Below, piece by piece: positions 11,367-54,986 of a stretch of 64,000 nucleotides of DNA (position 1 is the first letter of the stretch; each line of letters opens with the position of its first letter). The position numbers were made by a program, and so were the translations under genes. The notes beneath the pieces were generated by a model. That model worked only from the letters and a program-made list of their open reading frames with translations. It was not told where the DNA came from and ran no database searches. The stretch spans positions 1 through 64,000 of the IMG/VR virus record IMGVR_UViG_3300031576_000002. One strand, 5' to 3'.

Positions 11367-11840
11367 CTACAAGACAGTAGCATCCTGTTTAACTGCGTAG
11401 CCCTGGGCATTCACGATTCTTCTAGCCCGCACGATCTTCTCCTTTCTAGCGCAAGCGCTCACGCACACTCGCTTGCAACTGCGCACCGGCAAAGCGCGGA
11501 CATAGCGGGAGGTGCCCTGATGGACAAAGTTGGAGTAGTCACCGTTGAGGGCGACAAAGGCCGCCTCCGAGCCGCGCGATTCCGATGTCCAGGCCAGGAT
11601 TAGTTTTGGGGCAACTCTGGCAATCTTCTTGGCCTCCGCAAGCGTCGGAAGGCGCCAGTCAGTGTGACCACCTTCCCTGCAACCCGTGGCATAGTCCACA
11701 GCTTGCTGCCAGGTCAGATAGCGGCTTGCCCTAAGCGCCACCTGCAATGTACCGCCTCCCGTCTTCGCACCTCGCTGCTTCGTAGAGGACGTAGCGGCCT
11801 TCTCCTTCTTCCTGAGCGTATTCAAATCAATCTTTTTCAT
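11367..11840 (-). CDS. DUF1566 (Lcl C-terminal, C-type lectin fold) protein; putative DGR target 1
   Basis: TWQQAVDYA...GGHTDWRLPT..E...WTS...RALPVR motifs. Confidence 0.8.
   Translation of the reverse strand: MKKIDLNTLRKKEKAATSSTKQRGAKTGGGTLQVALRASRYLTWQQAVDYATGCREGGHTDWRLPTLAEAKKIARVAPKLILAWTSESRGSEAAFVALNGDYSNFVHQGTSRYVRALPVRSCKRVCVSACARKEKIVRARRIVNAQGYAVKQDATVL
11481..11591 (-). repeat. Putative DGR variable region VR1 (paralogous to 31776-31886)
   Basis: Identical 23-nt and 19-nt blocks shared with VR2; internal differences at codon positions 1/2 of NNY codons. Confidence 0.75.
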
Positions 11841-11957
11841 CGCTCTCCTCCGTCACTCCCTCGCCGCAGCACGGCGAAGCGGGTTCGAGTTGAATATCGT
11901 TGCCGCAGTAGCCGTGAACCTCGTAGCGTCCAATGCCGCCGTCTATTACTTCTCTTG

Positions 11958-14144
11958 TCAAACCACTGCCTCTAAGGCACAGAAACGAGAATTTCCCAGA
12001 ATGGTCAAGCGCTTCTTGGCTCGCGTCACTGCGATAAAGATCAGGTTCTTCTCCTGCTTGCGTTCCCACTCTTTCTTAGCCTTGGGGTGAGGCAACAGAC
12101 TGGGCTCCAGGATGTACACGCTATCAGCCTCAAGCCCCTTCCCGCGGTGGATACTGCTACAAATCACGCCCACGGCATCGTCCGAAAACACCTGCCCGAT
12201 CTTGTCTTCGAGATCGGCTAGTGTCATCGCACCATCCGACAACGCGATCAGGGTGTCCACCTTGTCGTCCAGAGCGTCGGTCGGGCGATCCAGCGCTTCC
12301 AGCTTGGCCGCCTCGCGCGTGTGATACTCGTTCAGCCGCGTCAAGAAGTCCACGATAGAGGTGCCGCCCAGCTTGCGAATCAGGGCGATCAGGCCAGCGC
12401 CAATATCCCTCCCCATAATCGTCGCCTTCTTACCCTGACGAATGAGGCCGAACGCGACCGAGACCAGGGGGGCATTGCACCGGCAGAGAACCATGTCCCC
12501 TGCTGCCAGCAGGTTCAGGGCCGCCTCAACTTTCGGCTCAATCCGCACCTCCCCTTCGGGAGCCGCCGCGCTGGCCTCGATCTCCGGTACAAACTGCCGG
12601 GCCAGGCGAACCACAGCTTGCGGGCACCGATACGAAATGCTAAGCGGCAGTACCTCTGCCTTCAGCTCGTTGATGAGCCGGTCCACCGCTTCCGCATCCG
12701 CTCCGCGGAACGAGTAGCATGCTTGATTCGCGTCGCCCACCGCAATGATGCGCCCATTCGGAGTCAGACTGCGCTGCAAGAGGCGGATCTGCGCCAAGTT
12801 GAGGTCTTGGCATTCGTCCACAAAGATCGTGTCATACTGCGCCACGGCCAGCTCCAGTGTCACCGGCAGCCATATCTGGTCGTCAAAATCCAGCTTCGTC
12901 GCCGTCTCAAAGTCCTTGCAGCGGTTGAGCACATCGGCCGCGATTACGATTGCCGCGTCTGCATCGCCATTCACGTCCAGTCCGTAGCGATCGATCAAAG
13001 AAATCGCTGCATCCCGCTCACGGAGGTCCGTCAAGGTCGCCTTTGCCAGAGATACCAGACGCTCCACAGAACGGGACAGCTCCTTGATCGCTTCCAAGCG
13101 CAGGTCAAGACCCCGCTCGCTCACAAGGATCTGCTTGATGAAGTCACGAATACGTCCGTTCGCGGTGTACTCGACCCGCTTCCCACCCAACGCCTTGTTG
13201 ACCGCGCCCCACCCCAGACTATTCAACGTCGAGATGTGGGCCGCCGAATCCGGGAGCCGCTTCTTGATCTCATTGGCAATCGACTTGTTAAAGGCGCAGA
13301 ATGCCACCCGTCCCTTCGCCAGCGGGAGAGCGCGCACCACGGTGGAGGTCTTGCCACTGCCGGCGGTGGCACGAATGACGACATTGCCGTGTCCATGCTC
13401 GACCGCTGCGAATACCCGCGCCTGATAGAGGCTCGGAGTGTACCCAGGCTTGCTGTACCGGGCCACCAGCTCCTCGTCCGTCAGAATGACCGGAGCCTCT
13501 TCCACCGGCTTAGCCTCGACCGAGGCCGGCGCGTTGACCTCCTCCTCGCGCACCTTCTCGATCCGGAGGCCGCCCTTGCCGGCCGCCTCGATCGCCTTGG
13601 GGTCGGTGGAGGGCGCCTTCTCGGTTGCGCGGCCCTTGCAGCCCGTGGCCTTCCACGCGGCGCAGGCGCGGAAGGTGCGCTCCGCGCCGGTCGCCTTGTC
13701 CTTGTACGCCTTGACGTAGATCGAGGCGCCACAGGTCGAGCAGGTACCGACCTCGTCCCGGATCCACTCGCGCAGGATGTTGCACTTGTCGCGCAAGCGG
13801 TCGAACAGCGCCGCCTTGGCCTGCGCCTCGTCGAGGCCGGCCGCAGCCGTCCGGTAGACACGGGGCTGCTTCTCGCGGAGGGGGACATCGTGGCGGGCGT
13901 CCACCACCACGATGCGGATGGCGTCCTCGCCGCAGTCGCGGCTAATGCCGGTACGAGCGTCGAGCGAGGAGTAGACCTTGACCTTGGCGGTCAGGATCTG
14001 CCGCTCGTAGACCAGCTCGTCACCCTGCTTGGGCGCGAGCACGAGCTTGGAGAAGGCCGCCTCGAACTCAGCCTTGGAGAAGGCAACGTAGGCCGCAGCC
14101 GGAGCATCCGGGGCGTCCTTCTTGGTAGCGCTCTTCTTCGCCAT
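11958..14144 (-). CDS. SF1 UvrD/PcrA-like helicase with N-terminal extension and Zn ribbon
   Basis: ATAGSGKT, FVDECQD, GDANQACYSFRGA, SYRCP, IHRGKGLE, FIAVTRAKK. Confidence 0.9.
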   Translation of the reverse strand: MAKKSATKKDAPDAPAAAYVAFSKAEFEAAFSKLVLAPKQGDELVYERQILTAKVKVYSSLDARTGISRDCGEDAIRIVVVDARHDVPLREKQPRVYRTAAAGLDEAQAKAALFDRLRDKCNILREWIRDEVGTCSTCGASIYVKAYKDKATGAERTFRACAAWKATGCKGRATEKAPSTDPKAIEAAGKGGLRIEKVREEEVNAPASVEAKPVEEAPVILTDEELVARYSKPGYTPSLYQARVFAAVEHGHGNVVIRATAGSGKTSTVVRALPLAKGRVAFCAFNKSIANEIKKRLPDSAAHISTLNSLGWGAVNKALGGKRVEYTANGRIRDFIKQILVSERGLDLRLEAIKELSRSVERLVSLAKATLTDLRERDAAISLIDRYGLDVNGDADAAIVIAADVLNRCKDFETATKLDFDDQIWLPVTLELAVAQYDTIFVDECQDLNLAQIRLLQRSLTPNGRIIAVGDANQACYSFRGADAEAVDRLINELKAEVLPLSISYRCPQAVVRLARQFVPEIEASAAAPEGEVRIEPKVEAALNLLAAGDMVLCRCNAPLVSVAFGLIRQGKKATIMGRDIGAGLIALIRKLGGTSIVDFLTRLNEYHTREAAKLEALDRPTDALDDKVDTLIALSDGAMTLADLEDKIGQVFSDDAVGVICSSIHRGKGLEADSVYILEPSLLPHPKAKKEWERKQEKNLIFIAVTRAKKRLTILGNSRFCALEAVV

Positions 14145-14167
14145 AATAGATTCTCCTTTCACTTAGT

Positions 14168-14196
14168 AATCTAATAAGACTGCACCCACCTGTCAA
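14168..14196 (-). promoter_or_regulatory. Sigma70-type promoter with degenerate AGTCT-N4-AGACT palindrome
   Basis: TTGACA-17 nt-TAGATT; AATCT-AATA-AGACT at 14168-14181. Confidence 0.75.
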
Positions 14197-14233
14197 GAGG
14201 CCCCCGCACTATTTTTCCGGCCCTGCCAAAATG

Positions 14234-14398
14234 TTAATAAATTCGGCCGACTAGGAAGGCCGCCAGCACAAGTAAGAATCCGGCAGTGATACCTGCTGCG
14301 ATCTGGATTCTACGATTCCGACGGCGACGCTCGACCGCCCGGACTACCGCCTGCTCTTCGGCGGCTAGATAGAACGCTACCCAGACAGGATCCATCAT
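14234..14398 (-). CDS. 54-aa membrane protein (not in ORF track)
   Basis: Manual translation MMDPVWVAFYLAAEEQAVVRAVERRRRNRRIQIAAGITAGFLLVLAAFLVGRIY; ATGA overlap with upstream small ORF. Confidence 0.5.
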   Translation of the reverse strand: MMDPVWVAFYLAAEEQAVVRAVERRRRNRRIQIAAGITAGFLLVLAAFLVGRIY

Positions 14399-14544
14399 CC
14401 GACTTTCCAATCCACTCCCTGCTCTACTGCTCCAAAAAAAATCTCACAGGACAAGCCGCCTGTCCAGGGCCACGCAAAAAACAGAGGAAGCGCTTGTACC
14501 CACTTCACTACTTCCAGTACCCAGTAGTAGTCCCCCATCAGCAT
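14395..14544 (-). CDS. 49-aa hydrophobic protein (not in ORF track)
   Basis: Manual translation MLMGDYYWVLEVVKWVQALPLFFAWPW... Confidence 0.3.
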   Translation of the reverse strand: MLMGDYYWVLEVVKWVQALPLFFAWPWTGGLSCEIFFGAVEQGVDWKVG

Positions 14545-14730
14545 CCCAGGAGACCTTACATGCTCTCGCAGATTTCTGTAAAAATCCTCTTCAAGATTAT
14601 CTGTCTCAGATCATACATAGCAGGCTTCTAAAATCTCAGTACACGATTCCTGCCGGTCCTCTATACGCCAGCCCTTCTCGATACTCTCCAGAAAACTTCT
14701 CTTCGTGGTGGGCTCAAAGCTGCCCATACC

Positions 14731-15054
14731 TCAAATCTCCAGCCGCAAGTAGCGCAGCCACTCCTCAATCACGTAAGCAGTTGCGACCGCGCCGAACCCG
14801 AATGCGATTGGCTCAACTAACGGTTGCAGCGTCCAGCTCCAAGGCATCCACGCCAGCCGAAGCGCGGCGGCAATCCAAAAGCTCAGGCACAGCTTGCACG
14901 ACCAGGGCTTCCGCTCCCAGATGATCGGAAGCTGGCCTAGCAGCCGCACCAACGGCGGCGGCTGATCGGTCGTCTTGGCCGTCAGGAACGGAAGGTACTG
15001 CTCCGTAAAGAGATGCGCTGCGCCGTAAGCCGACAGCAAAAATACAAGTTCCAC
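14731..15054 (-). CDS. Membrane protein, DUF1360-like
   Basis: Hydrophobic segments and CKLCLSFW motif. Confidence 0.6.
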   Translation of the reverse strand: MELVFLLSAYGAAHLFTEQYLPFLTAKTTDQPPPLVRLLGQLPIIWERKPWSCKLCLSFWIAAALRLAWMPWSWTLQPLVEPIAFGFGAVATAYVIEEWLRYLRLEI

Positions 15055-15056
15055 GG

Positions 15057-15704
15057 TTACGCCATCCGTTTGTCTTGCTGCGAGTTGACTTCTGCACCTT
15101 CTGTAAACCGTCGAATTATATTCGCCTCCATCTCAGGACTCCAGTCATGCAATGTCCGATTTCCAACCCCTGCGCCATTCGGCCATTCCAGATGTCCGTG
15201 CGTCAGCTTCACCCGCTCAAAATACTGCGGATCTCTCAACTGCCCGTAGACAGAGCCAATCATTATTGGCCGGAAATCAATCGTCTTCTCTGTCCCGTCG
15301 TCGAACATCATCTGGATCACTCCATGTCGTACAATGCGGTAATCCAGAATTTGATAGAATCTTGGTGCAGCAGCTTTCTTACGCGAACGCTTCTCGTACG
15401 GAGCAATCCTGTTTGGATGCTGTCCTACCGAGAGAAGTTCCCAATTTGCAAGTAGCTCACTCGCATGCTCTCTCGCCCATAACTGCACTTCCTTCTCCGC
15501 CTTGATAGCATCTTCTGTCAGCCTGAACGCCGAGGGAATCTCGTACACTGCGCTGGTTCCGTCTGTAAGCTCTGCGTGAAAGTGCGGTAAATGGTGAGGT
15601 TCATCAAACTCCGCATTCACGTAAACCCGGACATTCTTCCAACGTGATACTTCCGCCATCGCTGCTCGTCTAAGCTGCCGGGTAACTTTCTGGAGCCGTT
15701 TCAA
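15057..15704 (-). CDS. DUF4160 (HicA-like)-DUF2442 fusion protein
   Basis: EPHHLPHFHAE...EVQLWAREHASELLANW, then 'IQMMFDDG..KTIDF...L.DPQYF..VKL..G.LEWPNG'; start TTG 15704 or ATG 15659. Confidence 0.75.
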   Translation of the reverse strand: MKRLQKVTRQLRRAAMAEVSRWKNVRVYVNAEFDEPHHLPHFHAELTDGTSAVYEIPSAFRLTEDAIKAEKEVQLWAREHASELLANWELLSVGQHPNRIAPYEKRSRKKAAAPRFYQILDYRIVRHGVIQMMFDDGTEKTIDFRPIMIGSVYGQLRDPQYFERVKLTHGHLEWPNGAGVGNRTLHDWSPEMEANIIRRFTEGAEVNSQQDKRMA

Positions 15705-16570
15705 GATGCACCCACTCTCCGAAAAAGATTCCAATGCTCCTGCGCAAATCGTTCCCATGTCAGATGTTTGACCAATCGCCCCTCTTCATCACTGTCGCGC
15801 AATCTGTCGAGGTACAATGACTGCACGACCTCTACCAAACTGGTCAACGATCCACGATTGTAATGAATCGCGGGATAGCTCACGGCGTAGCCAATCGGCG
15901 GAATGATCGTCTGCACTCCGCATGCAAGCGCTTCGAGCAGCGGTACGGGACCACCCTCGATGTCGGACGTGCAAAGCAGGTAGTCGAGCCCGGCGTAGAA
16001 CGCAGGCAGTTTCTCGATCTGGAACGGTTCGGCCGAAAGCCCCCAGCCTTCCCCCATGATCCGCAAGACCACATGCTCTCGCACCCAGGGGTCGAACGCA
16101 AAGCGATGAAGAAGGTCGCGTCCCTTGCGCGTATCGAGGTTGTTTGTGGGCATATCATAGGTGCGGCCTACGACTCCAAGCACGAGGCGAGGCTTGTAGA
16201 TTGGGTCAACTCCAAGCTCGATTACGGTGATCTTCTCTTCTGGAATCCCGAAACGAAGAAGATCTTGCTTGGTGTACTCGGACATCGCCACGCAGAAGTC
16301 AACCCGCTTGGCTACGTCAATGAAGATCGGGCCGAGGACTTTCGCGGAGTAGTGACAGAAGAAAGCCCCGGACTTTTTTGCGCGCCCTGGGATCCTATCA
16401 AAATAGCCGTAGTTAATCGAAAATCTGATCTCTGCGTCCAGCCAGTAGTTCTCGTTCCAGCGCACTTCGTCTGGCGCTGCGTCCCGGATAACGCGGGCGC
16501 ACTTCGGCAGAATCCAGTTGCCGGGCTCGGAACAGAGATTAACTTGCATTCTGACCGGCCTTCTTAGCAC
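15701..16570 (-). CDS. Glycosyltransferase, GT-B (GT4-like)
   Basis: DYLLCTSDIEGGPVPLLEALACG motif; TWERFAQEH terminus. Confidence 0.85.
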   Translation of the reverse strand: MLRRPVRMQVNLCSEPGNWILPKCARVIRDAAPDEVRWNENYWLDAEIRFSINYGYFDRIPGRAKKSGAFFCHYSAKVLGPIFIDVAKRVDFCVAMSEYTKQDLLRFGIPEEKITVIELGVDPIYKPRLVLGVVGRTYDMPTNNLDTRKGRDLLHRFAFDPWVREHVVLRIMGEGWGLSAEPFQIEKLPAFYAGLDYLLCTSDIEGGPVPLLEALACGVQTIIPPIGYAVSYPAIHYNRGSLTSLVEVVQSLYLDRLRDSDEEGRLVKHLTWERFAQEHWNLFRRVGAS

Positions 16571-19206: not shown

Positions 19207-19262
19207 TGCCCGCGCTCGGCAAGTTCTCTAGGGGGCACTGCTGCGATAACAACCATAGCAGT

Positions 19263-20423
19263 TCAGCCTCCCTTTTCCGCTAACTCATTAAGTCTGCCTA
19301 CAGGCGTAGGCAGCCCGCCAATAAGGGCATAGACACGTAATGCAGCACTGAACGCGGCCCCAGTGTAGACACCCCTGTGAATTGTTACACCTTTGCGGCC
19401 CATCATTTCAGCCAATGCCGCGATACCGTACTCAACATCCTGGGCTTTCACCTTGGAAAGAACATCTGCGGAGCCCACTGCCAGAGCAGCGCCCAGCTTG
19501 GCCTTCGAGAGATCGAAGCCCTCAGCCAGCATGCCACGCTCCATGTTTTTTCGGATCGCTTCCGACAACTTGGTCGCGGAAGGATCCTTCACGTCCATGG
19601 CGCCAAACATGACCGTACCGCTACCAAGCACAGTACCCAGGTCACGGCGATCGAACGCCATGTCCGCAGGCGTAGCTGCCAAAACCGTGAACGCTTGCAG
19701 CATCGACAGCACGGCCAGATTCGGCTTCTCCCACTTCATCGTCAAAGAAAGGTTCGGCCAAATCTTCGGTATCCGGTTGTTGTCCACGACAATGAGCGGC
19801 GTCAGCTCGCCGCGATCGACCTTATCGAAGAGTGTCGTCAGAACCCTGTGCGCGTTGCGGCAAACGCCGGGCTGCTCCGTCGTCTGTGGAATCGTCACGA
19901 TTGCGCCGATTCTCGGATAAGCCGGATCAGGCCGCTCCAAGGTCTCGGTGTAGCGCTTGACCGTGTCGAAGATGTTCTGCCGGCCTTCCTTTTCAATCAT
20001 CGCGCCAGAGCCACTGCCGCCACCAGAACCGCTCGCGCAGAGTACGACCTCCACGTTTGCGCCGAGGCTGGTATGCAGCAGGTCGAAGATCGCGTCGCGC
20101 GCTTCATGGATCAAGTCGAGGCCAACATCGGGATTCTTTCCTGCGCCTCCGGTGTCTCCCGCAAGCAGCTTGCGCTCTGCGGGAAGAGCCTTGAGCTGTT
20201 CGAGGTCGCCGGGCGCGGTATTGATCGCGCAGACACGTCGCCAGCCAAGTCGCCAAGCGGTCTCCGCTAGACGGCCGCCTGCCTGGCCGATTCCTACGAA
20301 TCCAATTCGCACCGCGGACTGGAACGTATCCTCGTGCGGATCGACAACGGTTTCGATCTCCGGCAGCTCGAAACTCGCCAGCGCGTCAAGTCCCGTCTTT
20401 GGCTCAGTCATCCCGTCCCCCAT
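19263..20423 (-). CDS. Tubulin/FtsZ-superfamily GTPase (PhuZ/TubZ/CetZ-like)
   Basis: GIGQAGG, INT, GAGKN, GSGGGSGSG signature, VDNN, D..D. Confidence 0.9.
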   Translation of the reverse strand: MGDGMTEPKTGLDALASFELPEIETVVDPHEDTFQSAVRIGFVGIGQAGGRLAETAWRLGWRRVCAINTAPGDLEQLKALPAERKLLAGDTGGAGKNPDVGLDLIHEARDAIFDLLHTSLGANVEVVLCASGSGGGSGSGAMIEKEGRQNIFDTVKRYTETLERPDPAYPRIGAIVTIPQTTEQPGVCRNAHRVLTTLFDKVDRGELTPLIVVDNNRIPKIWPNLSLTMKWEKPNLAVLSMLQAFTVLAATPADMAFDRRDLGTVLGSGTVMFGAMDVKDPSATKLSEAIRKNMERGMLAEGFDLSKAKLGAALAVGSADVLSKVKAQDVEYGIAALAEMMGRKGVTIHRGVYTGAAFSAALRVYALIGGLPTPVGRLNELAEKGG

Positions 20424-20424
20424 T

Positions 20425-21108: not shown

Positions 21109-21111
21109 GTC

Positions 21112-24100
21112 TTACTCCTCGCGACCACCCAGCAAGTCCTTCGACCCTATCGAGCCTTCCTCGGTTCCATGCAGCGACTTCTCAAGCTGTGCCTCGGCAT
21201 CTGCAAGAGCCGCCGCCTCTTCCGTAGCATCGGCGTCCGTGAGCACACCTTCAAGTGTCAGCACTTTCCGAATCGTAGCAATTTCCTCGTCGGTTCGCCC
21301 AAGGCTGACCAGCTCGGCGTCAATGTCGTCCCACTGCATCGACAGAATCTCGCCGCCCTCTGGAGCGCTTTTGAGCTGCGCCTTCTTCCCGAATTTCTTC
21401 CACTCAGGATGAGAGGTATCTCCCTCACGCAGGAGTTCCACAAGAGGTTCCACGTCTTCGTAGTGAACGCCGCAGAACTTGCCTTCTTTATCCCAGATCC
21501 TTGAAGAGATGTGATCGGACGCAACTGGAAAGCGGTAGGGATCGTGACCGTTGCCGCTCGACTTCTTGGAAGTCTTACGACTGGCCGTAGGCATTGGCGG
21601 AGCCCCCGGCAAGCCCTTCGGCCCTTCCTCGCCTTCCGCGAAGAGGTCGGGGTGCTTGTCCATGATCTCTTTCTTGTACTCCTTCTCCTCGACGATCTGG
21701 CGGCGTTCTGCGTCCAGATCGAGTCCTGCTCCGGTTGCCATCGTGCGTTCCGAAATGATTCCACGTTCCATGAGGTCCCGCCAGGTAGAGAGCAGCGCAT
21801 TGTCCTGCGTCGGCTCCAAGCGCTTGCGCCACCAAATGCGGGGAACGATGAGCTGGCTTTCCTTCTTCTGAATGCGAACGCGATGACTGAGTTCCGCCGG
21901 TGTTCGCCGGTAGAACTCGTTCATTTTCGCTATTGCGACGAAGATTTTGGGATTGATCCAGCGCCGCTCGAACATACGGCGGAAGGTTTGGAGGCGCTCA
22001 ACCATAGTCTGTAGACCTGCGACAGCACTGGCGTAGCTGGCCTCACCGAGGAGGAAAGATTTTGAAATGCCGAGACCTAAGAATTTAACGCGCTCGATGA
22101 AGTCCCATTCGCGACTGGCTGAGTTGTGGGATGAGATAAAATTCGCCAAATACAGGTGATTGCCGTCCGTTTCAAGATTATAGACATTCCCTTTGTAAGG
22201 TCTGGAAGACACATCCTTGACAGAATACTGTACCCAGTCCCCTACAACTTGATTCCCAGCACTTCTCTTAAAAGTCCCTGTATACTTTTTACCATTCAAG
22301 AGTCCGTAAAGTTTTCTAGCGCTCGCCTGCGTAAGCGTAATTGTGTGACGCTTAGGAGCGTTTACATGATTATTTCTACGATGGTACGCCTCTTCCCGGA
22401 TGCCTAAGCTAGGAGCGAACCCCGTAATCTGTAGCAGTCTTACCAACTGTGAAGCTAGCCAAGGCGAAGTAGTAGAGGCCATAAGAGAAAGACTTTCCCA
22501 CTTCATTACGTATTTGCGCGTCCAGCCATCTCCAAGAAAATAGCCTTTCAAAAGTTCAAGCTGGAGGTCTTCCTCCCAGCAAAAAATACTTCTATGCAGC
22601 CACTTCTCTTGTGAGTATTTATCGGCGTATTTAATCAAAAGCTCTGTCATCTTACGAGCGGGCTCTTTCGGGTAGCAGCCCCGGACGTGAACTCCGTTAC
22701 CATAGGCTTTGTAAACTGCGGGCTTTACTCCAAACTCTTTCCGCATAATGTCCATAATGTCTTTTATGATTGTCGTGTCGCTCTTATCCAGGGCAATAGA
22801 AATCCCAGCATCACGGTTCCTATTGACGGATACCGCACATCCATCTGCAAGATAGTATCCGATCAGACGAGCTACATCGGGCGATACAGGTCTAGTCTTT
22901 TTCCCTTTTATATGTCTCGGCGCGACGAGCAGGTCGCCCGCGCGGATTTCAGACGCGGGCGCCTCAGTCGGTACCGCACACGAAGAATATCGAAATTTTG
23001 AAAAAAATTTACCGCAATAGCCATTATGCTTTCTAGGCTTTGCCTTCTTACAAGGCTCCCCATTTTTATAGCAGGGCGGCCTTTTAATGACGAGCAGCCT
23101 GTGTTCAGCGGTCACGCAAACAGGCTCCGGCAAACCTTGTACGCACAGTGTTACCATAGTACCCTTGTATTTTAAGGGTTTCACATTCAACGCCTTTACC
23201 GGCGTACCAGAGCCTCCTTGTAGAATCGTATCAGGCTCCACAAATTCTATAGGGCACTGTGTTCCGTCCTCCAGCGTGATAAGCGTTCCAGCCGGATGAC
23301 ACAAAAGGCGATCACTTACACCAACAAGCTCCACACTCAATCCGTAATTATAAACGATTGCCGCGAATGGATCCGTCTCGGCAATCGCCAACATGTTAAG
23401 AAACGACTCTTCGTCGGACTTAGACGGTAAAAATCCCGTAGCGGGGTCTCCGAGTTTGAAGATTCTAAGAGGGGCGGCATTACGCTGCGCGACTGCCAGA
23501 TAGGCATTGATTAGGAAATCGCTGACCATCTGAATCTGGTATAGCCTTGACAACATGCTCGTGCCCAGATGGGTATACGGTGAAATCTTTCGAGCAATAT
23601 ATGTGGCATTCAAAGGATCCAGAGGTATTGGAATTCCTGCAATCGCGTAATGAATGATCTTGGGCGGCAATTTTGCCCTCGCCCTCACAAGCCTCGGATC
23701 TTGACTGGTCGCCAATGCTCGCAATTCTGGAGTCGGCTTCAAGTCAATAACAGGCTCGAAACCGGGTACTGGTACAGGAGTTACTGCAAGGTAGTCAGGA
23801 TTGTAAACCAGCAGGTTAGACCAATAATTCTTACGAGTGTCATAGATAAGATGAGGCACAACTTTTCCAGTAATCAGATACTCTCTTGCCAATTCCGGAA
23901 GCCAGCTTAAAAGATTGAGATCCGACATCATACTCTCATAAATCTCTTTGACTCGCGGATCATCTTCGAGCCCGAGAAGATCAAATTCCGAGAACGGAAG
24001 CTCGCTCCAGACGTCCAAGGCCGCCCCCACCGCAGGATCGCTGCGGTACATGTGCCGCCAAATTGCATTGGCCTGCACTTCACTACGGGGGTAGTAGAAC

Positions 24101-24423
24101 TTGTCTGGCGTCGAGTAGCGTGGATCGTAATAGATCGGCGTACTGATCTGCGCCGTAGACCTTCCCCCCGCGACCGTGCCCGACGTAAAGCCTGCATTCG
24201 TCGCAGACGCAGAACTCCCAAATCCTCCGAACGGGTCGGACTGCTGCGCGGTTCGGTGGAACCCGCGCCGGGTGTAGACCGCACCTGTTGCTCTAGGCTC
24301 GGAGGAGAATCCGCCTCGTGCCGACGTCTCATTGAAGAGACGCGACATGAAGTCACCTGACGCTTGATCGCGGTATTTTTTACCGTCGTTCGCCATTGTA
24401 TTTAACCGCCCCACATCCCACAC
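21112..24423 (-). CDS. Phage portal protein interrupted by an intein
   Basis: 'DPAVGAALDVWSELPFS', 'GTSM', 'RNAAPLRIFKLGD', 'LGLGISKSFLLGEASYASA' large-phage portal pattern; lies in the head/packaging region with TerL. Confidence 0.8.
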   Translation of the reverse strand: MWDVGRLNTMANDGKKYRDQASGDFMSRLFNETSARGGFSSEPRATGAVYTRRGFHRTAQQSDPFGGFGSSASATNAGFTSGTVAGGRSTAQISTPIYYDPRYSTPDKFYYPRSEVQANAIWRHMYRSDPAVGAALDVWSELPFSEFDLLGLEDDPRVKEIYESMMSDLNLLSWLPELAREYLITGKVVPHLIYDTRKNYWSNLLVYNPDYLAVTPVPVPGFEPVIDLKPTPELRALATSQDPRLVRARAKLPPKIIHYAIAGIPIPLDPLNATYIARKISPYTHLGTSMLSRLYQIQMVSDFLINAYLAVAQRNAAPLRIFKLGDPATGFLPSKSDEESFLNMLAIAETDPFAAIVYNYGLSVELVGVSDRLLCHPAGTLITLEDGTQCPIEFVEPDTILQGGSGTPVKALNVKPLKYKGTMVTLCVQGLPEPVCVTAEHRLLVIKRPPCYKNGEPCKKAKPRKHNGYCGKFFSKFRYSSCAVPTEAPASEIRAGDLLVAPRHIKGKKTRPVSPDVARLIGYYLADGCAVSVNRNRDAGISIALDKSDTTIIKDIMDIMRKEFGVKPAVYKAYGNGVHVRGCYPKEPARKMTELLIKYADKYSQEKWLHRSIFCWEEDLQLELLKGYFLGDGWTRKYVMKWESLSLMASTTSPWLASQLVRLLQITGFAPSLGIREEAYHRRNNHVNAPKRHTITLTQASARKLYGLLNGKKYTGTFKRSAGNQVVGDWVQYSVKDVSSRPYKGNVYNLETDGNHLYLANFISSHNSASREWDFIERVKFLGLGISKSFLLGEASYASAVAGLQTMVERLQTFRRMFERRWINPKIFVAIAKMNEFYRRTPAELSHRVRIQKKESQLIVPRIWWRKRLEPTQDNALLSTWRDLMERGIISERTMATGAGLDLDAERRQIVEEKEYKKEIMDKHPDLFAEGEEGPKGLPGAPPMPTASRKTSKKSSGNGHDPYRFPVASDHISSRIWDKEGKFCGVHYEDVEPLVELLREGDTSHPEWKKFGKKAQLKSAPEGGEILSMQWDDIDAELVSLGRTDEEIATIRKVLTLEGVLTDADATEEAAALADAEAQLEKSLHGTEEGSIGSKDLLGGREE
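22123..23301 (-). mobile_element. Intein with LAGLIDADG homing endonuclease (393 aa)
   Basis: Starts CHPAGTLI, ends VYNLET..NHLYLANFISSHN/S; LIGYYLADG and LLKGYFLGDG; lower GC. Confidence 0.92.
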
Positions 24424-25556: not shown

Positions 25557-25558
25557 TT

Positions 25559-26284: not shown

Positions 26285-26290
26285 AGGAGG

Positions 26291-27269: not shown

Positions 27270-28792
27270 TAGACCTCCACCGCTGGCGTCTCGAACAGCT
27301 TGATGAGTTCCGCCATCTTCTTCTGGACGGCGTTCACGGTGGGATCAAGCCCTTCAAGGCGCCCCACGGCTTCGGCTAGATCCGACATGGGATCCCTGAA
27401 GAGTCGCTTGAGCTTGCCCACAACGTTGCCGATCTCCTCGATCAAGCGGCTGATGGGATTACTAGCCTGTGCCAGTCGGCGCATTGCAGGTCGCTGCATC
27501 TCCAACGACGGCGCGGGAGCTTCCTCGGGCACTCCCTGCTCCTGCTCACGTCGCTGGGTCTGCTTGACTTCCTTCGCGAGTCCGGGCGACCAGGGAAAGA
27601 TCGCCAGCAGCCGGTACAGGATGCGGCGCACGGGGCTGACAATCTTCTCCCGAACACGGTCCACCGCTGCCTCAATCTTGGCGTACTCACGGCTTTGCTC
27701 GCCGTAGATGTCCTTGAGTTCGTCGAGCACGGCCGCCAGCGTCTCCAGCCGGATCACGTCTTCGTCGGAGACATCGACCCGTTTCCCTTTCTTCATTGCA
27801 ATGATCCACTGTTCGTACTTGAAGTTCAGCTTCTCCGCAAGCTGAGAAGTACGGAAAATCTTGGTACTGTGCGCCGCCAGATGCGTTCCACCTGCCTCGG
27901 AAAAGTTGCTCGCGGATTCGGCCAGAGGAAGGAGATCGCTCAGCGCAGCATCCAACTTGGCGCCCAGCTCTTGCAGCTCCCGCTGGATCTCCTCGTGCTT
28001 CCGCCAGGTCTGCGACTTGTGCATCGCTTCCTGCGCCTTCTTCACGAGTTCCTTGCTCTCGGCCGCGAGCCCTTCCATGGAAGCCTTGACCTTGAGCGCA
28101 TTGTCGGTAAGCTTGGCGAGCTTCTTGTTGATCTGCTCCAGCTCAGTGAACTCCCGCTGAATGTCGATCTCGGGCGTCTTCTTCTTGAGACTGAGGTACT
28201 TATCCTCTTCCTCCTCTTCCACCGGCTGCGCCTGACACAAAATCGCGGCTACCCGTTCGATACGGGCCAGGGCTCGCGTCAGCAGCGTGAACTTGGGATC
28301 CAGGGACGCTGTCTTGATCCTCCCCTGCGTCCCGATCTCCCACTCGACCCAGACTGTAGAATCGGGACCTGGTGCGATCACTTCTCCGACGACACGCTTG
28401 CCTGCGGCCTCGGATCTCACGAGATCGCCTACCTCGAAATCGCGCGCGGTAGAGAGGCTGGCAACGTGCTCCCGCATGCCTTCCATGGCGGCTTTGACAG
28501 CGAAGGGGCGGTAGATCGTAGAAAGATCCTCGTGAATATCTTCGAGCGATCTTCCCAGCATCCACAACGCCACAGCGCGACTCTGGGCGTCTTCCTCTTT
28601 CTTCTTGGGCTGCGCAAGTCTTACTTCTGCGGCCTTGACCATAAGCCGCTCGCCCGTCGAGATAGAGGTCACGTATGCGACATCACCCGTGCGTCCTTCG
28701 TAGGTACCGATGTCGTCGCGCAACTCGACAGTCGCGCCAATGGGAATGTTACTCATCGAGAAGATCCTCCGCGCCGATATGCGTACCGACAT
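27269..28792 (-). CDS. Hypothetical protein with SH3-like and coiled-coil segments (probable virion protein)
   Basis: ORF track; strongly biased codon usage. Confidence 0.6.
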   Translation of the reverse strand: MSVRISARRIFSMSNIPIGATVELRDDIGTYEGRTGDVAYVTSISTGERLMVKAAEVRLAQPKKKEEDAQSRAVALWMLGRSLEDIHEDLSTIYRPFAVKAAMEGMREHVASLSTARDFEVGDLVRSEAAGKRVVGEVIAPGPDSTVWVEWEIGTQGRIKTASLDPKFTLLTRALARIERVAAILCQAQPVEEEEEDKYLSLKKKTPEIDIQREFTELEQINKKLAKLTDNALKVKASMEGLAAESKELVKKAQEAMHKSQTWRKHEEIQRELQELGAKLDAALSDLLPLAESASNFSEAGGTHLAAHSTKIFRTSQLAEKLNFKYEQWIIAMKKGKRVDVSDEDVIRLETLAAVLDELKDIYGEQSREYAKIEAAVDRVREKIVSPVRRILYRLLAIFPWSPGLAKEVKQTQRREQEQGVPEEAPAPSLEMQRPAMRRLAQASNPISRLIEEIGNVVGKLKRLFRDPMSDLAEAVGRLEGLDPTVNAVQKKMAELIKLFETPAVEV

Positions 28793-29531
28793 GTTCCCAG
28801 GCCCACAAATCCTCGGAAGGAATCTGGTGGGTCTCTTGCGTTCTCAGGTCGAGACTACAAACGCTGTCTTCCGTTGCTGCGATCACCTTGACCAGCGTGC
28901 GACCGTCCATACTGCGCAGCATGTCCCCTGCCGCAACAGACGCAGACATCGGGCGGGGATCGAACTCTTCTCCGAGGTCTTGGTAGTTCTGGCCCTCTTC
29001 CCACTGCGTTCGGAGTGGCTGCTCATCAAGCAGCAAGCTCGTCACTTCCGCACTTTTGCAGTGGGGGCAAGACAGATCCACGCTCTCGGTCGCTTGCATG
29101 CCAAAAAGAGTACCACACGCCGAGCAGCGAAAGCGAGAAGCGGCTGCCTCTTCCACCAGGTAGATCTTGTCCTGACTCTCTGCCACCTTCCGGTAGAGGC
29201 CCTTGGGAAGATCGCTACCCGTTGCACGCTGGTAGCGGATTCTTGCTTCGGGGTAGGACCAGCCATCTTCGACAAGGGCTTGCAAGATCACGGGATCGCC
29301 CGCAAGCATTTCACGGCCTCGGTGCTTGTTCATTTGTTCGCCTCTCCCTCGCGGATTCCAGGGACTCACAGGTGTCACGCCAAGGGTGGTGTCGCTGCGG
29401 TAGTCTACACCCTCTTCCCGGTAACGGTCGGCAGACCAACTGTAGTCCCGCGTCGTAGCGCCGGGATCCAGCCGGTCCCAGTCTCGCACACCCGTCGGCT
29501 GCTCCTTCTTCTTGATCCGTCGTCGGGGCAT
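28749..29531 (-). CDS. Hypothetical Zn-ribbon protein
   Basis: CSACG...CPHCKS. Confidence 0.6.
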   Translation of the reverse strand: MPRRRIKKKEQPTGVRDWDRLDPGATTRDYSWSADRYREEGVDYRSDTTLGVTPVSPWNPRGRGEQMNKHRGREMLAGDPVILQALVEDGWSYPEARIRYQRATGSDLPKGLYRKVAESQDKIYLVEEAAASRFRCSACGTLFGMQATESVDLSCPHCKSAEVTSLLLDEQPLRTQWEEGQNYQDLGEEFDPRPMSASVAAGDMLRSMDGRTLVKVIAATEDSVCSLDLRTQETHQIPSEDLWAWEHVGTHIGAEDLLDE

Positions 29532-30463
29532 CAGTCCTCGTCCTCTTCTTCGATGGTATCGCGCAGATCATCGACATTTTCATCCGTGATTTCTACGTCT
29601 TTGAACTCAGAGTACAAACGCTTGAGAAGCGTCACGTACTGCCAGCGTTCCAGCAGCTTGGACACGATATTGGCCGGAGCCAGGTTAGCACTTTCACCAG
29701 GTCCTACCGGACAATCTTCGCCCGGACACTTGTCCAAGTAGGTCGAAAAGACTTCGGCACGTTCCCTGTCGAACGTATCGTAGCTCGCAAGCACGGTCTC
29801 TACGTCATCATCCAGTTCCTGTATCTTACCGTCGATCCGTCGCATGACCGCAGCGCGCACGTCAAGAGGTACTTTGCGCAATGCTGCACGCAAAAAGTCG
29901 AGGTCGCGCAAATCGCGCTCGGTCTCGCCCAGTTCCAGATCGAGCTTTCGCGCCCAGCTCACGGCACGCGCGTAGACGTCCTCCTCAAGCTGCTCAGGAT
30001 CTTCAATGAGCGGGGCTGGGTCGTAGTCGAACCAAACTTCTTTCATCACGTCGTAGACGTTATCGAGAACGCCAATCCGCTTCGGCCATTCTTCTCGGGT
30101 CGCAATGAAAAAGTTCACAGGATGCTCGGCCACTTGGTAGCGGCCATTCAAGTCAGGCAGGATTTTTTTGATCTCGTCTCGCCTTCCTTCGTCTACGTCC
30201 AGGACAACGCCGATGTCGAGATCCGCCGCCGGTGCCCAGTTCTTTGACGTGATCGAGCCGGAAAGGAACACGCCTTCAAGAGCGTCTTCACTGAGCCCCG
30301 ACTCATCTAGTAGGTCGGACAGTCCATCACCGATTGCCTGGCGGGTCTCCTCACGGAGTCGAGGCGGATCCTCGGAAAGATCCCAGACAGTCTCGTCGAG
30401 CTGATCCAGTGGATAATCCAGCGGACCTGCCAGCAGAGCAATGGCGTTTTGAAGAAAGCTCAT
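29531..30463 (-). CDS. Nucleotidyltransferase (Pol-beta fold, GS...DxD)
   Basis: FLSGSIT..NW...ADLDI...HPVNFF; followed by helical domain. Confidence 0.8.
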   Translation of the reverse strand: MSFLQNAIALLAGPLDYPLDQLDETVWDLSEDPPRLREETRQAIGDGLSDLLDESGLSEDALEGVFLSGSITSKNWAPAADLDIGVVLDVDEGRRDEIKKILPDLNGRYQVAEHPVNFFIATREEWPKRIGVLDNVYDVMKEVWFDYDPAPLIEDPEQLEEDVYARAVSWARKLDLELGETERDLRDLDFLRAALRKVPLDVRAAVMRRIDGKIQELDDDVETVLASYDTFDRERAEVFSTYLDKCPGEDCPVGPGESANLAPANIVSKLLERWQYVTLLKRLYSEFKDVEITDENVDDLRDTIEEEDED

Positions 30464-31005
30464 GCACGCTCTCGTAGGCTGATCTCGATTCGCACGGCTC
30501 TCGATTCAGGCGTGACTCTTACTTCGACCCTGGAGGTATCAAGCGCTGCATCAAGCACTAACCGGGCTCTCCACCGTCTTGCCTCTCGATCATCGTCCCG
30601 CATCTGAAAGGTTTCATCTGGCTTCGGTATTCTACGTTTCCGCTTTCGTAGCCCCAGATCCAGTTCAGTCTGCTCGGTCGTACTTCGCGGACGTTCTGCA
30701 CGGTACAGGATTTCTTCTGCCAGTGGAGAAGCAGCTTTCAAAAAAGTCTGCCGTATGTACGGAAGCTGTCTCTCTGTCCACGCTGCGGATTCTACAGGTT
30801 TGCCTGAAGGGATGATGACTACGATACGGGCTCGGTCTCGTGGATGAAGTGTACCTTTCGGGTTCAGAAACTCTTTTGCCGCGTGTGCTACGGCAGCGCC
30901 TACTAACTGAAGATTTCTGAATTCTACTTTCGACAGTCCTTTATCATCCAGCGGAAGTTCCTGCTGACCCTTCAAGATACAGACCACGCGCCGAAGATGG
31001 ATCAT
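30460..31005 (-). CDS. Hypothetical protein
   Basis: ORF track; ATGA coupling. Confidence 0.5.
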   Translation of the reverse strand: MIHLRRVVCILKGQQELPLDDKGLSKVEFRNLQLVGAAVAHAAKEFLNPKGTLHPRDRARIVVIIPSGKPVESAAWTERQLPYIRQTFLKAASPLAEEILYRAERPRSTTEQTELDLGLRKRKRRIPKPDETFQMRDDDREARRWRARLVLDAALDTSRVEVRVTPESRAVRIEISLRERA

Positions 31006-32807
31006 CGTTCGCGCCGAAAGACGCGGTGAAACTCGCCCGGCGGCTGTTGGTGGAGCTGCACTTGATCGGCTTCATCCACGCCGTAGGGTGGCAGGCGACC
31101 CTGGTTCCAGCGGCGAATCTTGGGGCGTGCTTTGAGGCTCGGCATGATCGGGCCTAGACCACGGGCACGGTCCATGCGCTCCATCTCTTCCAGGTCGCCT
31201 ACCGTTAGAAAGCGACGCCGCTTGTGCGGAACGATCAGCGTTTGGTCCCGGTCTCTTTTCGCATACCCCCCACCCATGCCGGGGTAGTGATAGAGTTCGG
31301 GATCGACGTATTCGTCCGGCTCCAGAGATGTCCAGCGCGGTTGGTACTCCGCCGCCTCGTGAACAGTAACGCGATCCCCGACACCAATACGGCTTGTCCG
31401 GCAGAATCCGCCCGCAGTCTCCAGCACTCCCCCCACACTCGCACAATGGTAGAGGTCATGATCGCCTGGCTGGACGTTGTGGACGATGCGAGCTACCTGG
31501 TAGCCACTACCGGCGTGACGCAGGAACACCATGTCAATCGGGAACGGGACCGTGGACATGTGAAAGGTAACGGACGCGGGAACGTGGTAGGGAAAGAGCA
31601 TGGCTTGGTCACGCTCCAAGCTAGAGTGCTTTGAAAGTCCAATACGCTTTTCGCTATCGGAATCGGCAACGTGTGCCCGGAGCTGGACTTTCCCTAGCCT
31701 TAAAATTACTTCTCGCATTGCGGTTCCCCTTTTCTCCTTCTTACCCTCTAGCCCATCTTCACCGAACTTGCGAAGGCGCACCGGCAAAGCGCGGGAGAAG
31801 TGGGAGTAGCCCTGGGCGCCGAAGTTGGAGTTGCCATTGAAGAGGTAGACGTAAGCCGCCTCCGAGCCGCGCGATTCGGAGGTCCAAATCCATACGGGCT
31901 CTTTGTACAAGCCCGTCTCGTAAATCCTCTTCGCCTCTTCTGCCGTAGGAAGTCTCCAATCTGTGAATCCTCCCTCTCGATAGTTTCTGGCGTAGGTTGT
32001 GGCATCCTTCCAGTTGATGTCTTTTCCGTTGTGACCTTCGGCAACTTGAAGATTACCCAGCGGCTTGAGCCGCTTCTCTAGCTCTTCTGGATGACTGAAA
32101 AGCCACGCCTTTTCAAATTCTTCCGCCTTTACCTTTCCTAGCCCGATCTCATCCAAGATTGGAGCTATTTCTTTCGACACTCTCAGGTTTATTCTTTTAC
32201 CATCTACATCTTTCAACTGCCCACTTTCAGGATGAGCTAAGACGTAAGGCTCGCCACCCTTGAAAATCATATACAACGGTCCCTGCTCACTGTACTCCTT
32301 TGCTCTCTCTGGGTATCTAACACACCATCCTTGTGCGTCGTAGTCCTCGCATATACGCATGATTGCGGCTGGAGTCGTGGTCTTAACTACGGCGTAGGCT
32401 CCATCATCGTATATCTTCTGCTGTCCTTCCTTCTCCTCAATCTGCTTCTTATGTTCTTTGGACTCCTGACCTTTTGACTCTCGAATAACTTGGGCTAGAT
32501 CAGAAAAGGAACGGTACTGATTGATGTCTTTTGGACTTGTGAATCTCGGACTACTCTTTAGCTTGTCAAAGGTTATGAGAATGTCGTGAATCTTCTCAGA
32601 GTCCTCTGGAATTATAATGTCTTGCTTTTTGAGAAGTCGTAGGATCCACCCCAGATACTTCTTCTCGGTAGTAGGATCGGCTTCGGCAGCATCTCGTATC
32701 TTGGCTTCCTCGAACTGAGGAAACAGTTGGAGAAGCTTGGAAAGCCTTTCCTCCAAGCCTCCTCCCAGCAGCCAAACCGCAGAATGGAGCGTACCTGCCC
32801 TATTCAC
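31002..32807 (-). CDS. Multidomain protein: DPT..KY..W/KDINQY/WC phage domain + DUF1566 C-type lectin (putative DGR target 2) + DUF192
   Basis: INWKDATTYA...GGFTDWRLPT...WTSES...RALPVR; then 'VADS..EKRIGLS...MLFPY....FHM..VPFPIDMVFL...VLETAGG' (DUF192). Confidence 0.8.
   Translation of the reverse strand: MNRAGTLHSAVWLLGGGLEERLSKLLQLFPQFEEAKIRDAAEADPTTEKKYLGWILRLLKKQDIIIPEDSEKIHDILITFDKLKSSPRFTSPKDINQYRSFSDLAQVIRESKGQESKEHKKQIEEKEGQQKIYDDGAYAVVKTTTPAAIMRICEDYDAQGWCVRYPERAKEYSEQGPLYMIFKGGEPYVLAHPESGQLKDVDGKRINLRVSKEIAPILDEIGLGKVKAEEFEKAWLFSHPEELEKRLKPLGNLQVAEGHNGKDINWKDATTYARNYREGGFTDWRLPTAEEAKRIYETGLYKEPVWIWTSESRGSEAAYVYLFNGNSNFGAQGYSHFSRALPVRLRKFGEDGLEGKKEKRGTAMREVILRLGKVQLRAHVADSDSEKRIGLSKHSSLERDQAMLFPYHVPASVTFHMSTVPFPIDMVFLRHAGSGYQVARIVHNVQPGDHDLYHCASVGGVLETAGGFCRTSRIGVGDRVTVHEAAEYQPRWTSLEPDEYVDPELYHYPGMGGGYAKRDRDQTLIVPHKRRRFLTVGDLEEMERMDRARGLGPIMPSLKARPKIRRWNQGRLPPYGVDEADQVQLHQQPPGEFHRVFRRER
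31776..31886 (-). repeat. Putative DGR variable region VR2
   Basis: Same length as VR1 (37 codons), no indels, identical flanking blocks. Confidence 0.75.
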
Positions 32808-54953: not shown

Positions 54954-54986
54954 GTCCGATCCTCCAATAGCCAGGGTTATCTGACC

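What the first reader, a model, noticed from the sequence alone, without database searches (positions are those of the whole stretch)
11481..31886. Two remote DUF1566 segments look like variable regions of one diversity-generating retroelement
Seen: 11481-11591 and 31776-31886 are each 37 codons with no indels. They share identical blocks GAATCGCGCGGCTCGGAGGCGGC (23 nt) and CCGCGCTTTGCCGGTGCGC (19 nt, GC-rich, IMH-like), while the WRLPT region just upstream has diverged at synonymous sites. All 12 non-synonymous codon pairs differ at position 1 and/or 2 and both members end in C or T (gcc/tac, aac/ttc, ggt/aat, acc/tac, gtc/tcc...), as expected from AAY template codons. A 7-bp-stem hairpin (11451-11476) starts 4 nt past VR1. 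Established: DUF1566/CLec is a common DGR target fold, and adenine-specific mutagenesis yields NNY codons. Inference: a multi-target DGR acts in trans over at least 20 kb on two proteins that are not tail fibres. RT, Avd and template repeat are not in this window.
Basis: partly seen in the sequence, partly recalled or inferred. Interest (0 to 1): 0.9.

Follow-up and report, generated by a model that had tools for sequence, protein, structure and literature searches.

The report
Orphan DGR variable regions, jumbo phage
Three small lectin-fold genes scattered around a complete 205-kb phage genome carry the mutation pattern left by retroelement-driven hypermutation, but the genome holds no reverse transcriptase or template, so the diversifying machine was either lost or sits on another replicon.

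Summary
The two 111-nt segments lie on the minus strand. A third copy (VR3) lies outside the window on the same contig, IMGVR_UViG_3300031576_000002.

- **Sharp tract boundary.** VR2 and VR3 differ at 18 first or second codon positions and at 0 of 37 third positions. Just upstream, 35 of 52 third positions differ.
- **Codon signature.** All 39 variable codons are NNY (P about 8e-12).
- **Fold.** The domain is a C-type-lectin-like Lcl_C/DUF1566 fold. The variable codons align with the AAC codons of a verified DGR template of the same class.
- **Internal control.** A fourth paralog diverges in the ordinary way.

This is DGR-type writing, not ordinary paralogy.

The DGR itself is missing. The contig is a closed 205,000-bp circle in two assemblies. 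I read all of it and found no reverse transcriptase (RT), no Avd and no template repeat (TR). No template turned up in JGI metagenome contigs, including this sample, or in GTDB genomes.

Best reading: orphan targets of a recently lost DGR. The more novel rival is a DGR acting from another replicon. VR1 carries 7 third-position differences that one shared template cannot explain. The hairpin is not significant.

The parts
11481..11591 (-). VR1: 37-codon variable tract (protein WTSESRGSEAAF...RALPVR) at the end of the lectin-like domain of P1
11367..11840 (-). P1: 157-aa protein with a basic N-terminus, an Lcl_C/DUF1566-like domain, VR1 and a 37-aa tail. It lies just downstream of a UvrD-like helicase.
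   Evidence: (Lcl_C E 1.6e-7, 32.1 bits against a cut-off of 34.9)
11472..11480 (-). Nine more bases (AGTTGCAAG) downstream of VR1. They are identical in VR3 but not in VR2, and mark the 3' edge of the shared tract.
   Evidence: VR1/VR3 longest exact run 28 nt
11450..11477 (-). It is not better than shuffles and is not conserved at VR2 or VR3, so it is probably not part of the feature.
31776..31886 (-). VR2: 37-codon variable tract. It is internal to P2, with about 255 codons following it.
31002..32756 (-). P2: 584-aa protein as called by JGI (the longest ORF starts at 32807). It has an unknown N-terminal region of about 240 aa, an Lcl_C/DUF1566-like domain with VR2, then DUF192 with no stop codon between.
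31365..31679 (-). DUF192 domain fused downstream of VR2. An AAGGAG motif plus an ATG near 31720 could also allow a separate start.
   Evidence: DUF192 E 1e-19

Best explanation
The tracts are variable regions written by a diversity-generating retroelement (DGR). An error-prone RT copies an AAY-rich template RNA, misreads adenines, and the cDNA replaces the last roughly 111 nt of a C-type-lectin-like (Lcl_C/DUF1566, 'CLec2'-class) domain.

The targets are three small, non-structural proteins of a 205-kb myovirus-like jumbo phage:
- P1 at 11.4 kb.
- P2 at 31-33 kb.
- P3 at 182.7-183.2 kb of the contig.
- A fourth tandem paralog, P4, was never a target, or stopped being one long ago.

Shown: the mutational signature, the fold, and the absence of RT, Avd and TR from the complete circular genome.

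Inferred: the DGR cassette was lost from this lineage recently, leaving three frozen 'orphan' variants. VR2 and VR3 were last rewritten from the same template version. VR1 was written earlier or from a slightly different template. The proteins most likely act as intracellular or released binding modules whose ligand-binding face was being varied.
For: 1. Tract boundary. P2 and P3 differ at 35 of 52 third codon positions upstream and at 0 of 37 inside the tract (Fisher P 3e-12). Inside the tract they differ at 18 first or second positions in 11 codons.
2. Codon signature. All 39 instances of the 13 amino-acid-variable codons are NNY, against 52% NNY genome-wide (P 8e-12).
3. Adenine distribution. 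A makes up 33% of bases at variable position-1/2 sites and 7% at constant sites (P 3e-7).
4. Internal control. In P4 the equivalent region differs at 19-24 of 36 third positions and uses NNR codons.
5. Fold. The AlphaFold model has pLDDT 88.8. Its best PDB match is the Legionella Lcl C-terminal domain (TM 0.74, E 1.5e-4), followed by C-type-lectin-like folds. Pfam Lcl_C scores E 1e-7 to 1e-8.
6. Positional match to a real DGR. Six of the 7 AAC codons in the TR of a verified DGR of the same fold class (L013: TR, two VRs, RT) align with variable codons here. Three of 7 foreign viral loci encoding relatives carry a DGR RT or its remnant. L009 has a tandem pair with the same position-1/2-only pattern.
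7. DUF1566/CLec2 is an established DGR target class, and half of its members are short single-domain proteins (PMC5758913).
8. Absence of the machine. The genome is a 205,000-bp circle: the JGI contig has a 227-nt terminal overlap, and the ENA contig is a circular permutation of it with the same period. The whole contig was read in overlapping pieces.
   - No RVT Pfam hit.
   - tblastn and a DGR-RT HMM over all six frames give nothing below E 3, while the positive controls score 1e-243 and 1e-39.
   - Sensitive blastn with the VRs finds only the VRs and P4.
9. Decay is plausible. L010 and L011 show a DUF1566 target next to a truncated RT.
10. Clonality. Logan k=31 contigs run unbroken through the variable codons of VR1 and VR2 and break only at the 41-nt repeat that VR2 and VR3 share exactly. 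This suggests a clonal state in the sample.
Against: - Without a TR, adenine specificity cannot be shown directly.
- Six adenines at constant sites (ACN, GAA, GAG, AAC/NAC, CAG) are retained in all three VRs. That requires selection, or a template shorter than the shared tract.
- VR1 has 7 third-position differences from VR2 and VR3, which a single template cannot produce.
- VR2 is internal rather than C-terminal.
- No conserved hairpin or cruciform follows the VRs.
- Zero synonymous drift between VR2 and VR3 means any loss must be very recent. That coincidence makes an active DGR elsewhere a serious alternative.
- All three assemblies compared match base for base over VR2 and at the VR1 and VR3 proteins and appear to derive from one sample (not verified), so population variability was not measured.
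Confidence: 0.55

Rival explanations
1. An active DGR on another replicon (host chromosome, prophage, plasmid, satellite or co-infecting phage) supplies RT, Avd and template RNA in trans. It rewrites the three phage-borne VRs during infection.
For: VR2 and VR3 are identical at all 81 constant sites and all third positions, although their genes are saturated elsewhere. This fits ongoing or very recent homing. The avd-TR-brt unit works in trans from a plasmid, and DGRs can reach targets more than 100 kb away (PMC5758913). All three VRs keep the same 3' block.
Against: - No template with the 20- or 23-nt block was found in JGI metagenome contigs, including the phage's own sample. Of 51 hits, 48 were unrelated ORFs and 3 were the VRs themselves.
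- None was found in GTDB genomes by DNA or by peptide pattern.
- Logan contigs pass through the variable codons unbroken, so no obvious heterogeneity exists in the sample.
- No precedent is known to me for a cellular DGR targeting a lytic phage genome (my own knowledge).
Confidence: 0.2
2. Ordinary paralogy: a recent gene conversion copied about 115 nt among the paralogs, and diversifying selection then changed the ligand-binding codons by point mutation.
For: The four paralogs are a diverging gene family. The motifs SE(S/T)RGSEAA and RALPVR are conserved at protein level in distant relatives, so part of the block identity reflects protein constraint.
Against: - There are 18 changes at positions 1-2 and none at position 3 between VR2 and VR3. 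Seven of the 11 changed codons differ at both positions.
- All 39 variable codons are NNY (P 8e-12).
- P4 shows what ordinary divergence looks like in the same region.
Confidence: 0.07
3. The phage encodes an unrecognised diversifier: a polymerase outside known RT families, with a template that is not a collinear DNA copy.
For: Many ORFs of 250-500 aa have no family assignment.
Against: Any templated mechanism needs the constant blocks. Word-7 blastn over the whole genome finds none beyond the VRs. No RT-like motif scores in six frames.
Confidence: 0.05
4. Assembly artefact: the cassette exists in the real genome but was dropped where TR and VR repeats collapse.
For: The k=31 Logan assembly does break at the VR2/VR3 repeat.
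Against: - Two large-k assemblies give the same 205,000-bp circle with different linearisation points.
- The longest exact VR-VR repeat is 41 nt, well below those k values.
- A dropped cassette would remain as a separate contig carrying the block, and none exists.
Confidence: 0.05

Closest known systems
Legionella pneumophila DGR and its target LdtA (CLec2 / DUF1566 class, category 'd' of Wu et al. 2018, PMC5758913)
   Same: Same target fold class: the best structural match is the Legionella Lcl C-terminal domain. The variable codons lie in the last strands of the domain and are of NNY type. Short single-domain targets are common in this class.
   Different: LdtA is a surface lipoprotein with an adjacent RT/Avd/TR cassette. 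Here the proteins show no obvious N-terminal signal sequence by eye (not tested with a predictor), sit among phage replication and early-type genes, and have no cassette in the genome.
Bordetella phage BPP-1 DGR (Mtd tail-fibre target)
   Same: It is phage-borne and uses AAY-templated adenine mutagenesis of a C-type-lectin fold. The VR length is about 110-135 nt, with a constant GC-rich 3' end.
   Different: BPP-1 has one structural target with avd-TR-brt immediately downstream and a functional hairpin after the IMH. Here there are three dispersed non-structural targets, no cassette and no conserved hairpin.
Multi-target DGRs with remote targets (Treponema denticola, cyanobacteria; PMC5758913)
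   Same: One template serves several paralogous targets tens of kilobases apart or more.
   Different: Those are cellular, and the RT and TR are in the same genome. Wu et al. argue that remote targets are not expected for phage DGRs.
L013 (IMGVR_UViG_2835097387_000001; RT 100% identical to an Arenimonas caeni protein): verified DGR with two DUF1566 targets
   Same: Same domain family, and the variable positions are homologous.
   Different: Its TR and RT are present within 6 kb of both VRs, and every TR-VR mismatch lies at a TR adenine.
Decayed DGRs (L010/L011 here; inactive DGRs are reported in some phage lineages, e.g. PMC6199706, which was listed by a search but not read in detail)
   Same: A target gene is retained while the RT is truncated or lost.
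   Different: In L010 and L011 an RT remnant is still adjacent. In this phage nothing remains.

Membership tests
Diversity-generating retroelement (complete system) | DGR-clade reverse transcriptase encoded in the same genome | tested here: not met
   The whole 205-kb circle was read. There is no RVT_1 hit. tblastn gives a best E of 3.2 and the six-frame DGR-RT HMM a best E of 3.4, while controls score 1e-243 and 1e-39.
Diversity-generating retroelement (complete system) | Template repeat: a near-copy of the VR with adenines at the variable sites | tested here: not met
   The exact 23-mer and two degenerate VR patterns occur only 3 times in IMG/VR, and all three are VRs. Word-7 blastn over the whole genome finds only the VRs and P4. 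My TR/VR script finds the L013 control but nothing here.
Diversity-generating retroelement (complete system) | Accessory protein Avd or equivalent next to the RT | tested here: not met
   No Avd-type Pfam family appears in any precomputed or own annotation of the genome. Small ORFs were not all scanned individually.
DGR target / variable region | TR-VR mismatches restricted to template adenines | not testable with these tools
   There is no TR to compare with. Indirect evidence: VR-VR differences lie only at codon positions 1-2 (VR2 against VR3), A is enriched at variable sites (33% against 7%), and all variable codons are NNY.
DGR target / variable region | Variable codons compatible with AAY template codons, with no stop or NNR codons | tested here: met
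   39 of 39 are NNY (P 8e-12).
DGR target / variable region | Homogenised tract with sharp boundaries inside otherwise diverged paralogs | tested here: met
   0 of 37 third-position differences inside against 35 of 52 outside (P 3e-12). VR1 is less clean, at 7 of 37.
DGR target / variable region | IMH plus downstream hairpin/cruciform | tested here: inconclusive
   A constant GC-rich 19-nt 3' block is shared. The hairpin occurs only after VR1 and is not better than shuffles. IMH cannot be defined without IMH*.
DGR target / variable region | Within-population hypervariability at the variable sites | not testable with these tools
   No read data are available. The three assemblies compared match base for base over VR2 and at the VR1 and VR3 proteins. 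Logan unitigs pass VR1 and VR2 unbroken.
Lcl_C / DUF1566 (PF07603), C-type-lectin-like fold | Pfam model match | tested here: inconclusive
   E is 2.5e-8 to 3.2e-7, but 31.1-34.6 bits falls just under the 34.9-bit gathering score. JGI's precomputed hits list PF07603. Relatives P0003-5 pass at 51-61 bits.
Lcl_C / DUF1566 (PF07603), C-type-lectin-like fold | Three-dimensional fold | tested here: met
   The model has pLDDT 88.8 and pTM 0.81. The top PDB hit is 8q4e (Legionella Lcl C-terminal domain; TM 0.74, E 1.5e-4), followed by 8oks, snake-venom C-type-lectin-like proteins and intimin/invasin C-terminal lectin-like domains.

The most novel reading that the evidence does not exclude
A DGR encoded outside the phage (host chromosome, resident prophage, plasmid or satellite) rewrites three dispersed, non-structural lectin-fold genes of an infecting jumbo phage. 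That would be cross-replicon mutagenic retrohoming, with the phage carrying only the targets and borrowing the diversifier.
Probability: 0.17. Interest if true: 0.8.

Novelty: new member of a known kind. Interest (0 to 1): 0.45.

Why it matters
DGR surveys start from the reverse transcriptase, so target sets that have lost their RT, or never carried one, go uncounted. This case shows that VR-VR comparison alone can recognise DGR-written genes: position-1/2-only differences, NNY codons and sharp tract edges.

It also places DGR targets in small non-structural proteins of a jumbo phage, rather than in tail fibres. That points to a varied intracellular or secreted binding function, possibly aimed at a variable host factor.

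If the diversifier proves to be on another replicon, it would be a new form of phage-host or phage-element interplay. If it was lost, this is a dated snapshot of DGR decay, with three frozen variants and an internal non-target control.

Tried and rejected
**Template in the window or genome.** The exact blocks with up to 3 mismatches, degenerate patterns with N at the variable sites, two IMG/VR pattern scans and word-7 blastn over every piece found only the three VRs and P4. One 46-nt blastn hit (L099:11665-11710, E 0.006) was read and is a chance match inside an unrelated ORF.

**RT.** I ran Pfam on all long ORFs, used JGI's precomputed Pfam along about 115 kb, and ran tblastn and an HMM built from 40 DGR RTs. 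Nothing scored.

**Template elsewhere.**
- The 20-mer in JGI metagenome contigs gave 48 chance hits in GC-rich ORFs encoding SRGSEAA, plus the three VRs.
- The 23-mer in GTDB genomes gave none.
- The peptide-pattern scan of GTDB gave none.

**Other searches.**
- GenBank phages gave no DNA or protein relative.
- The protein database gave only 5 hits: the protein itself, P3 and three distant ones. There are no near-identical variants from other samples to test population variability.
- PDB by sequence gave nothing meaningful.
- Rfam gave no hit in the window or the VR3 locus.

**Hypotheses dropped.**
- The hairpin as a DGR cruciform: not significant and not conserved.
- The Logan contig break inside VR2 as a sign of hypervariability: it is explained by the 41-nt exact repeat shared with VR3, which is longer than k=31.
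- VR1 or P4 acting as the template: neither has adenines at the variable sites.
Full report
**1. The observation**

Both segments are real and lie in frame on the minus strand.
- VR1 (11481-11591) is in a 157-aa ORF, 11367-11840.
- VR2 (31776-31886) is in a 584-601-aa ORF, 31002-32756/32807.

The 23-nt and 19-nt blocks each occur exactly twice in the window. No dinucleotide-preserving shuffle gave two matches, even with up to 3 mismatches allowed. The repeat finder reports a single 120-nt family at 77% identity, spaced 20,295 nt.

A codon alignment shows 37 codons with no indel. Twelve codon pairs are non-synonymous, all changed at position 1 and/or 2, and all are NNY. Upstream, 35 of 52 third positions differ.

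**2. Source and a third copy**

The 23-mer occurs three times in all of IMG/VR, all on IMGVR_UViG_3300031576_000002 (205,227 bp). The window is positions 1-64,000 of that contig.
- The third copy, VR3, is at contig 182,956-183,066 (L001:4942-5052, minus strand), inside a 190-aa protein, P3.
- A fourth paralog, P4 (102 aa, L001:4355-4663), lies immediately downstream.
- A profile search of all six frames of the genome finds exactly these four paralogs.

**3. The substitution pattern**

*VR2 against VR3.* They differ at 18 nucleotides in 11 codons, all at positions 1 or 2. None of the 37 third positions differs. In the 52 codons just upstream, 35 third positions differ (Fisher P 3e-12).

*Across the three VRs.* Thirteen codons vary in amino acid. 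All 39 codon instances are NNY, against 52% NNY in long genes of the window (P 8e-12). Adenine makes up 33% of bases at the 23 variable position-1/2 sites and 7% at the 81 constant sites.

*P4 as internal control.* Its equivalent region differs from the others at 19-24 of 36 third positions and uses NNR codons.

Point mutation with selection cannot give many double changes per codon with no silent change at all. Gene conversion alone would erase the differences. Templated adenine mutagenesis from AAY codons fits this combination far better than the rivals considered.

*The anomaly.* VR1 differs from VR2 and VR3 at 7 third positions, five of them C/T, while VR2 equals VR3 at all of them. VR1 was therefore written from an earlier or different template version, or it has drifted since its last homing event. 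Non-A differences are known in 23% of DGRs, with up to 11 in one target (PMC5758913).

**4. Fold and family**

All four paralogs hit Pfam Lcl_C (formerly DUF1566) at E 1e-7 to 1e-8, just under the gathering score. Distant relatives pass it.

An AlphaFold model of the P3 domain (pLDDT 88.8) matches the Legionella Lcl C-terminal domain best (TM 0.74). C-type-lectin-like folds follow.

Wu et al. class DUF1566 VRs as 'CLec2', typified by the Legionella DGR, with half of the targets being short single-domain proteins.

My TR/VR script found a textbook DGR in locus L013, a relative fetched by protein pattern. That locus has a TR, two VRs whose every mismatch lies at a TR adenine, and an RT. In the protein alignment, 6 of its 7 AAC codons fall on codons that vary in this phage.

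L010 and L011 carry a relative next to a truncated RT. L009 has a tandem pair showing the same position-1/2-only pattern.

**5. Is the machine in the genome?**

*Completeness.* The contig ends repeat its start: 227 nt, 226 identical. An independent ENA assembly (205,093 bp) is a circular permutation with a period of exactly 205,000 bp. The genome is therefore complete.

*Coverage.* I fetched all of it in overlapping pieces without joining them:
- window
- L090, and L092 through L102
- L007
- L005

*RT.* No RVT family appears in JGI's precomputed Pfam or in my own scans. tblastn with the L013 RT gives a best E of 3.2. An HMM built from 40 DGR RTs gives a best E of 3.4 over 4,986 six-frame fragments. 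The controls score 1e-243 and 1e-39.

*Template.* Two degenerate VR patterns with N at the variable sites match only the three VRs in IMG/VR. Word-7 blastn finds only the VRs and P4.

**6. Is the machine elsewhere?**

The 20-nt core of the 5' block was scanned against JGI metagenome contigs, including the source sample. It returned 51 loci. Three are the VRs, and 48 are unrelated ORFs.

GTDB species genomes hold no copy of the 23-mer and no gene encoding the constant peptide. GenBank phages and the protein database hold no close relative.

The three assemblies compared (JGI, ENA, Logan) match base for base over VR2 and at the VR1 and VR3 proteins, so they give no population data. Logan k=31 contigs run through all variable codons of VR1 and VR2. 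They break only where VR2 and VR3 share 41 identical bases. This is weak evidence that the VRs are clonal in this sample.

**7. Interpretation**

The VRs were written by a DGR; I put that at about 0.85. The DGR core is absent from the complete genome, and that is shown.

- **Recent loss (0.55).** This is the most economical reading. It leaves three frozen variants.
- **Active DGR on another replicon (0.2).** The perfect identity of VR2 and VR3 at all constant and silent sites keeps this alive.
- **Ordinary paralogy, a hidden in-genome mechanism, or misassembly.** Each is unlikely.

Function is inference only. The proteins show no obvious N-terminal signal sequence by eye (not tested with a predictor). 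They sit among replication and early-type genes: a UvrD helicase next to P1, and a methylase, NYN and Thg1-like genes near P3/P4. They are not near the tail module at 64-95 kb. I therefore favour varied binding modules aimed at a host factor over receptor-binding proteins.

**8. Points against the DGR reading**

- Six constant adenines are retained in all VRs.
- VR2 is internal to its protein. Wu et al. note one such CLec2 case.
- The hairpin after VR1 is no better than shuffles and is absent at VR2 and VR3.
- Adenine specificity cannot be verified without a TR.

Noticed in passing
window 49808-51688(-); 21112-24423(-); contig about 96.9-98.8 kb (L094:1451-3292): Three intein-bearing genes. 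One is a RecA-like gene with an Intein_splicing plus HNH insert. One is a 1103-aa protein with a LAGLIDADG intein whose host protein I did not identify. One is a 613-aa intein-containing gene.
   Followed up: no
window 2747-3919(-), 37930-39075(-); contig about 146.7-147.9 kb and about 160.1-161.3 kb: At least four TnpB / IS605 OrfB (Cas12f-like TNB) genes are scattered in the phage genome.
   Followed up: no
window 47714-47794(-): ARAGORN calls an 81-nt tRNA-Arg(tcg) inside the Mre11/SbcD-like ORF 46987-48093. Rfam gives no tRNA hit at gathering score, so it is probably a false positive.
   Followed up: partly
window 51685-54450(-); 19263-20423(-): The family A DNA polymerase carries an N-terminal uracil-DNA-glycosylase domain. 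A TubZ/PhuZ-like tubulin is also present. Both are typical jumbo-phage features.
   Followed up: no
window 54984-55028 / 61618-61662 and 39094-39127 / 61558-61591: Intergenic direct repeats of 45 nt (87% identical) and 34 nt (82% identical) that share an ATTATACTACCTATCT-type core. They may be phage promoter or operator motifs.
   Followed up: no
window 31680-31775(-): There is no stop codon between the DUF1566 domain with VR2 and the DUF192 domain. An AAGGAG motif followed by an ATG suggests DUF192 might also be translated on its own.
   Followed up: partly
L010:5667-6617 and L011:10017-10967: Two viral contigs encode a DUF1566 relative followed by an ORF in which only the C-terminal ~94 aa resemble a DGR RT, then an integrase. 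These look like decaying DGR cassettes.
   Followed up: partly
L014 (IMGVR_UViG_3300035190_000444) and L015 (372-kb IMGVR_UViG_3300042367_000228): These AT-rich large phage contigs carry arrays of many small DUF1566-like genes. Each sits behind a near-identical promoter-like repeat (TTTGCTATAATAT...). This is expansion by paralogy rather than by DGR.
   Followed up: no
L009:9588-9700 and 10188-10300: Tandem DUF1566 genes whose last roughly 110 nt differ almost only at codon positions 1-2 in NNC codons. This is a second VR-VR pair with no RT in the 20 kb fetched.
   Followed up: partly
P0003, P0004, P0005 (other metagenomes): Distant relatives share the SE(S/T)RGSEAA and RALPVR motifs, with an N/G/Y-rich stretch between them. 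The constant blocks are therefore partly a protein-level feature of a DUF1566 subfamily that may generally be DGR-targeted.
   Followed up: no
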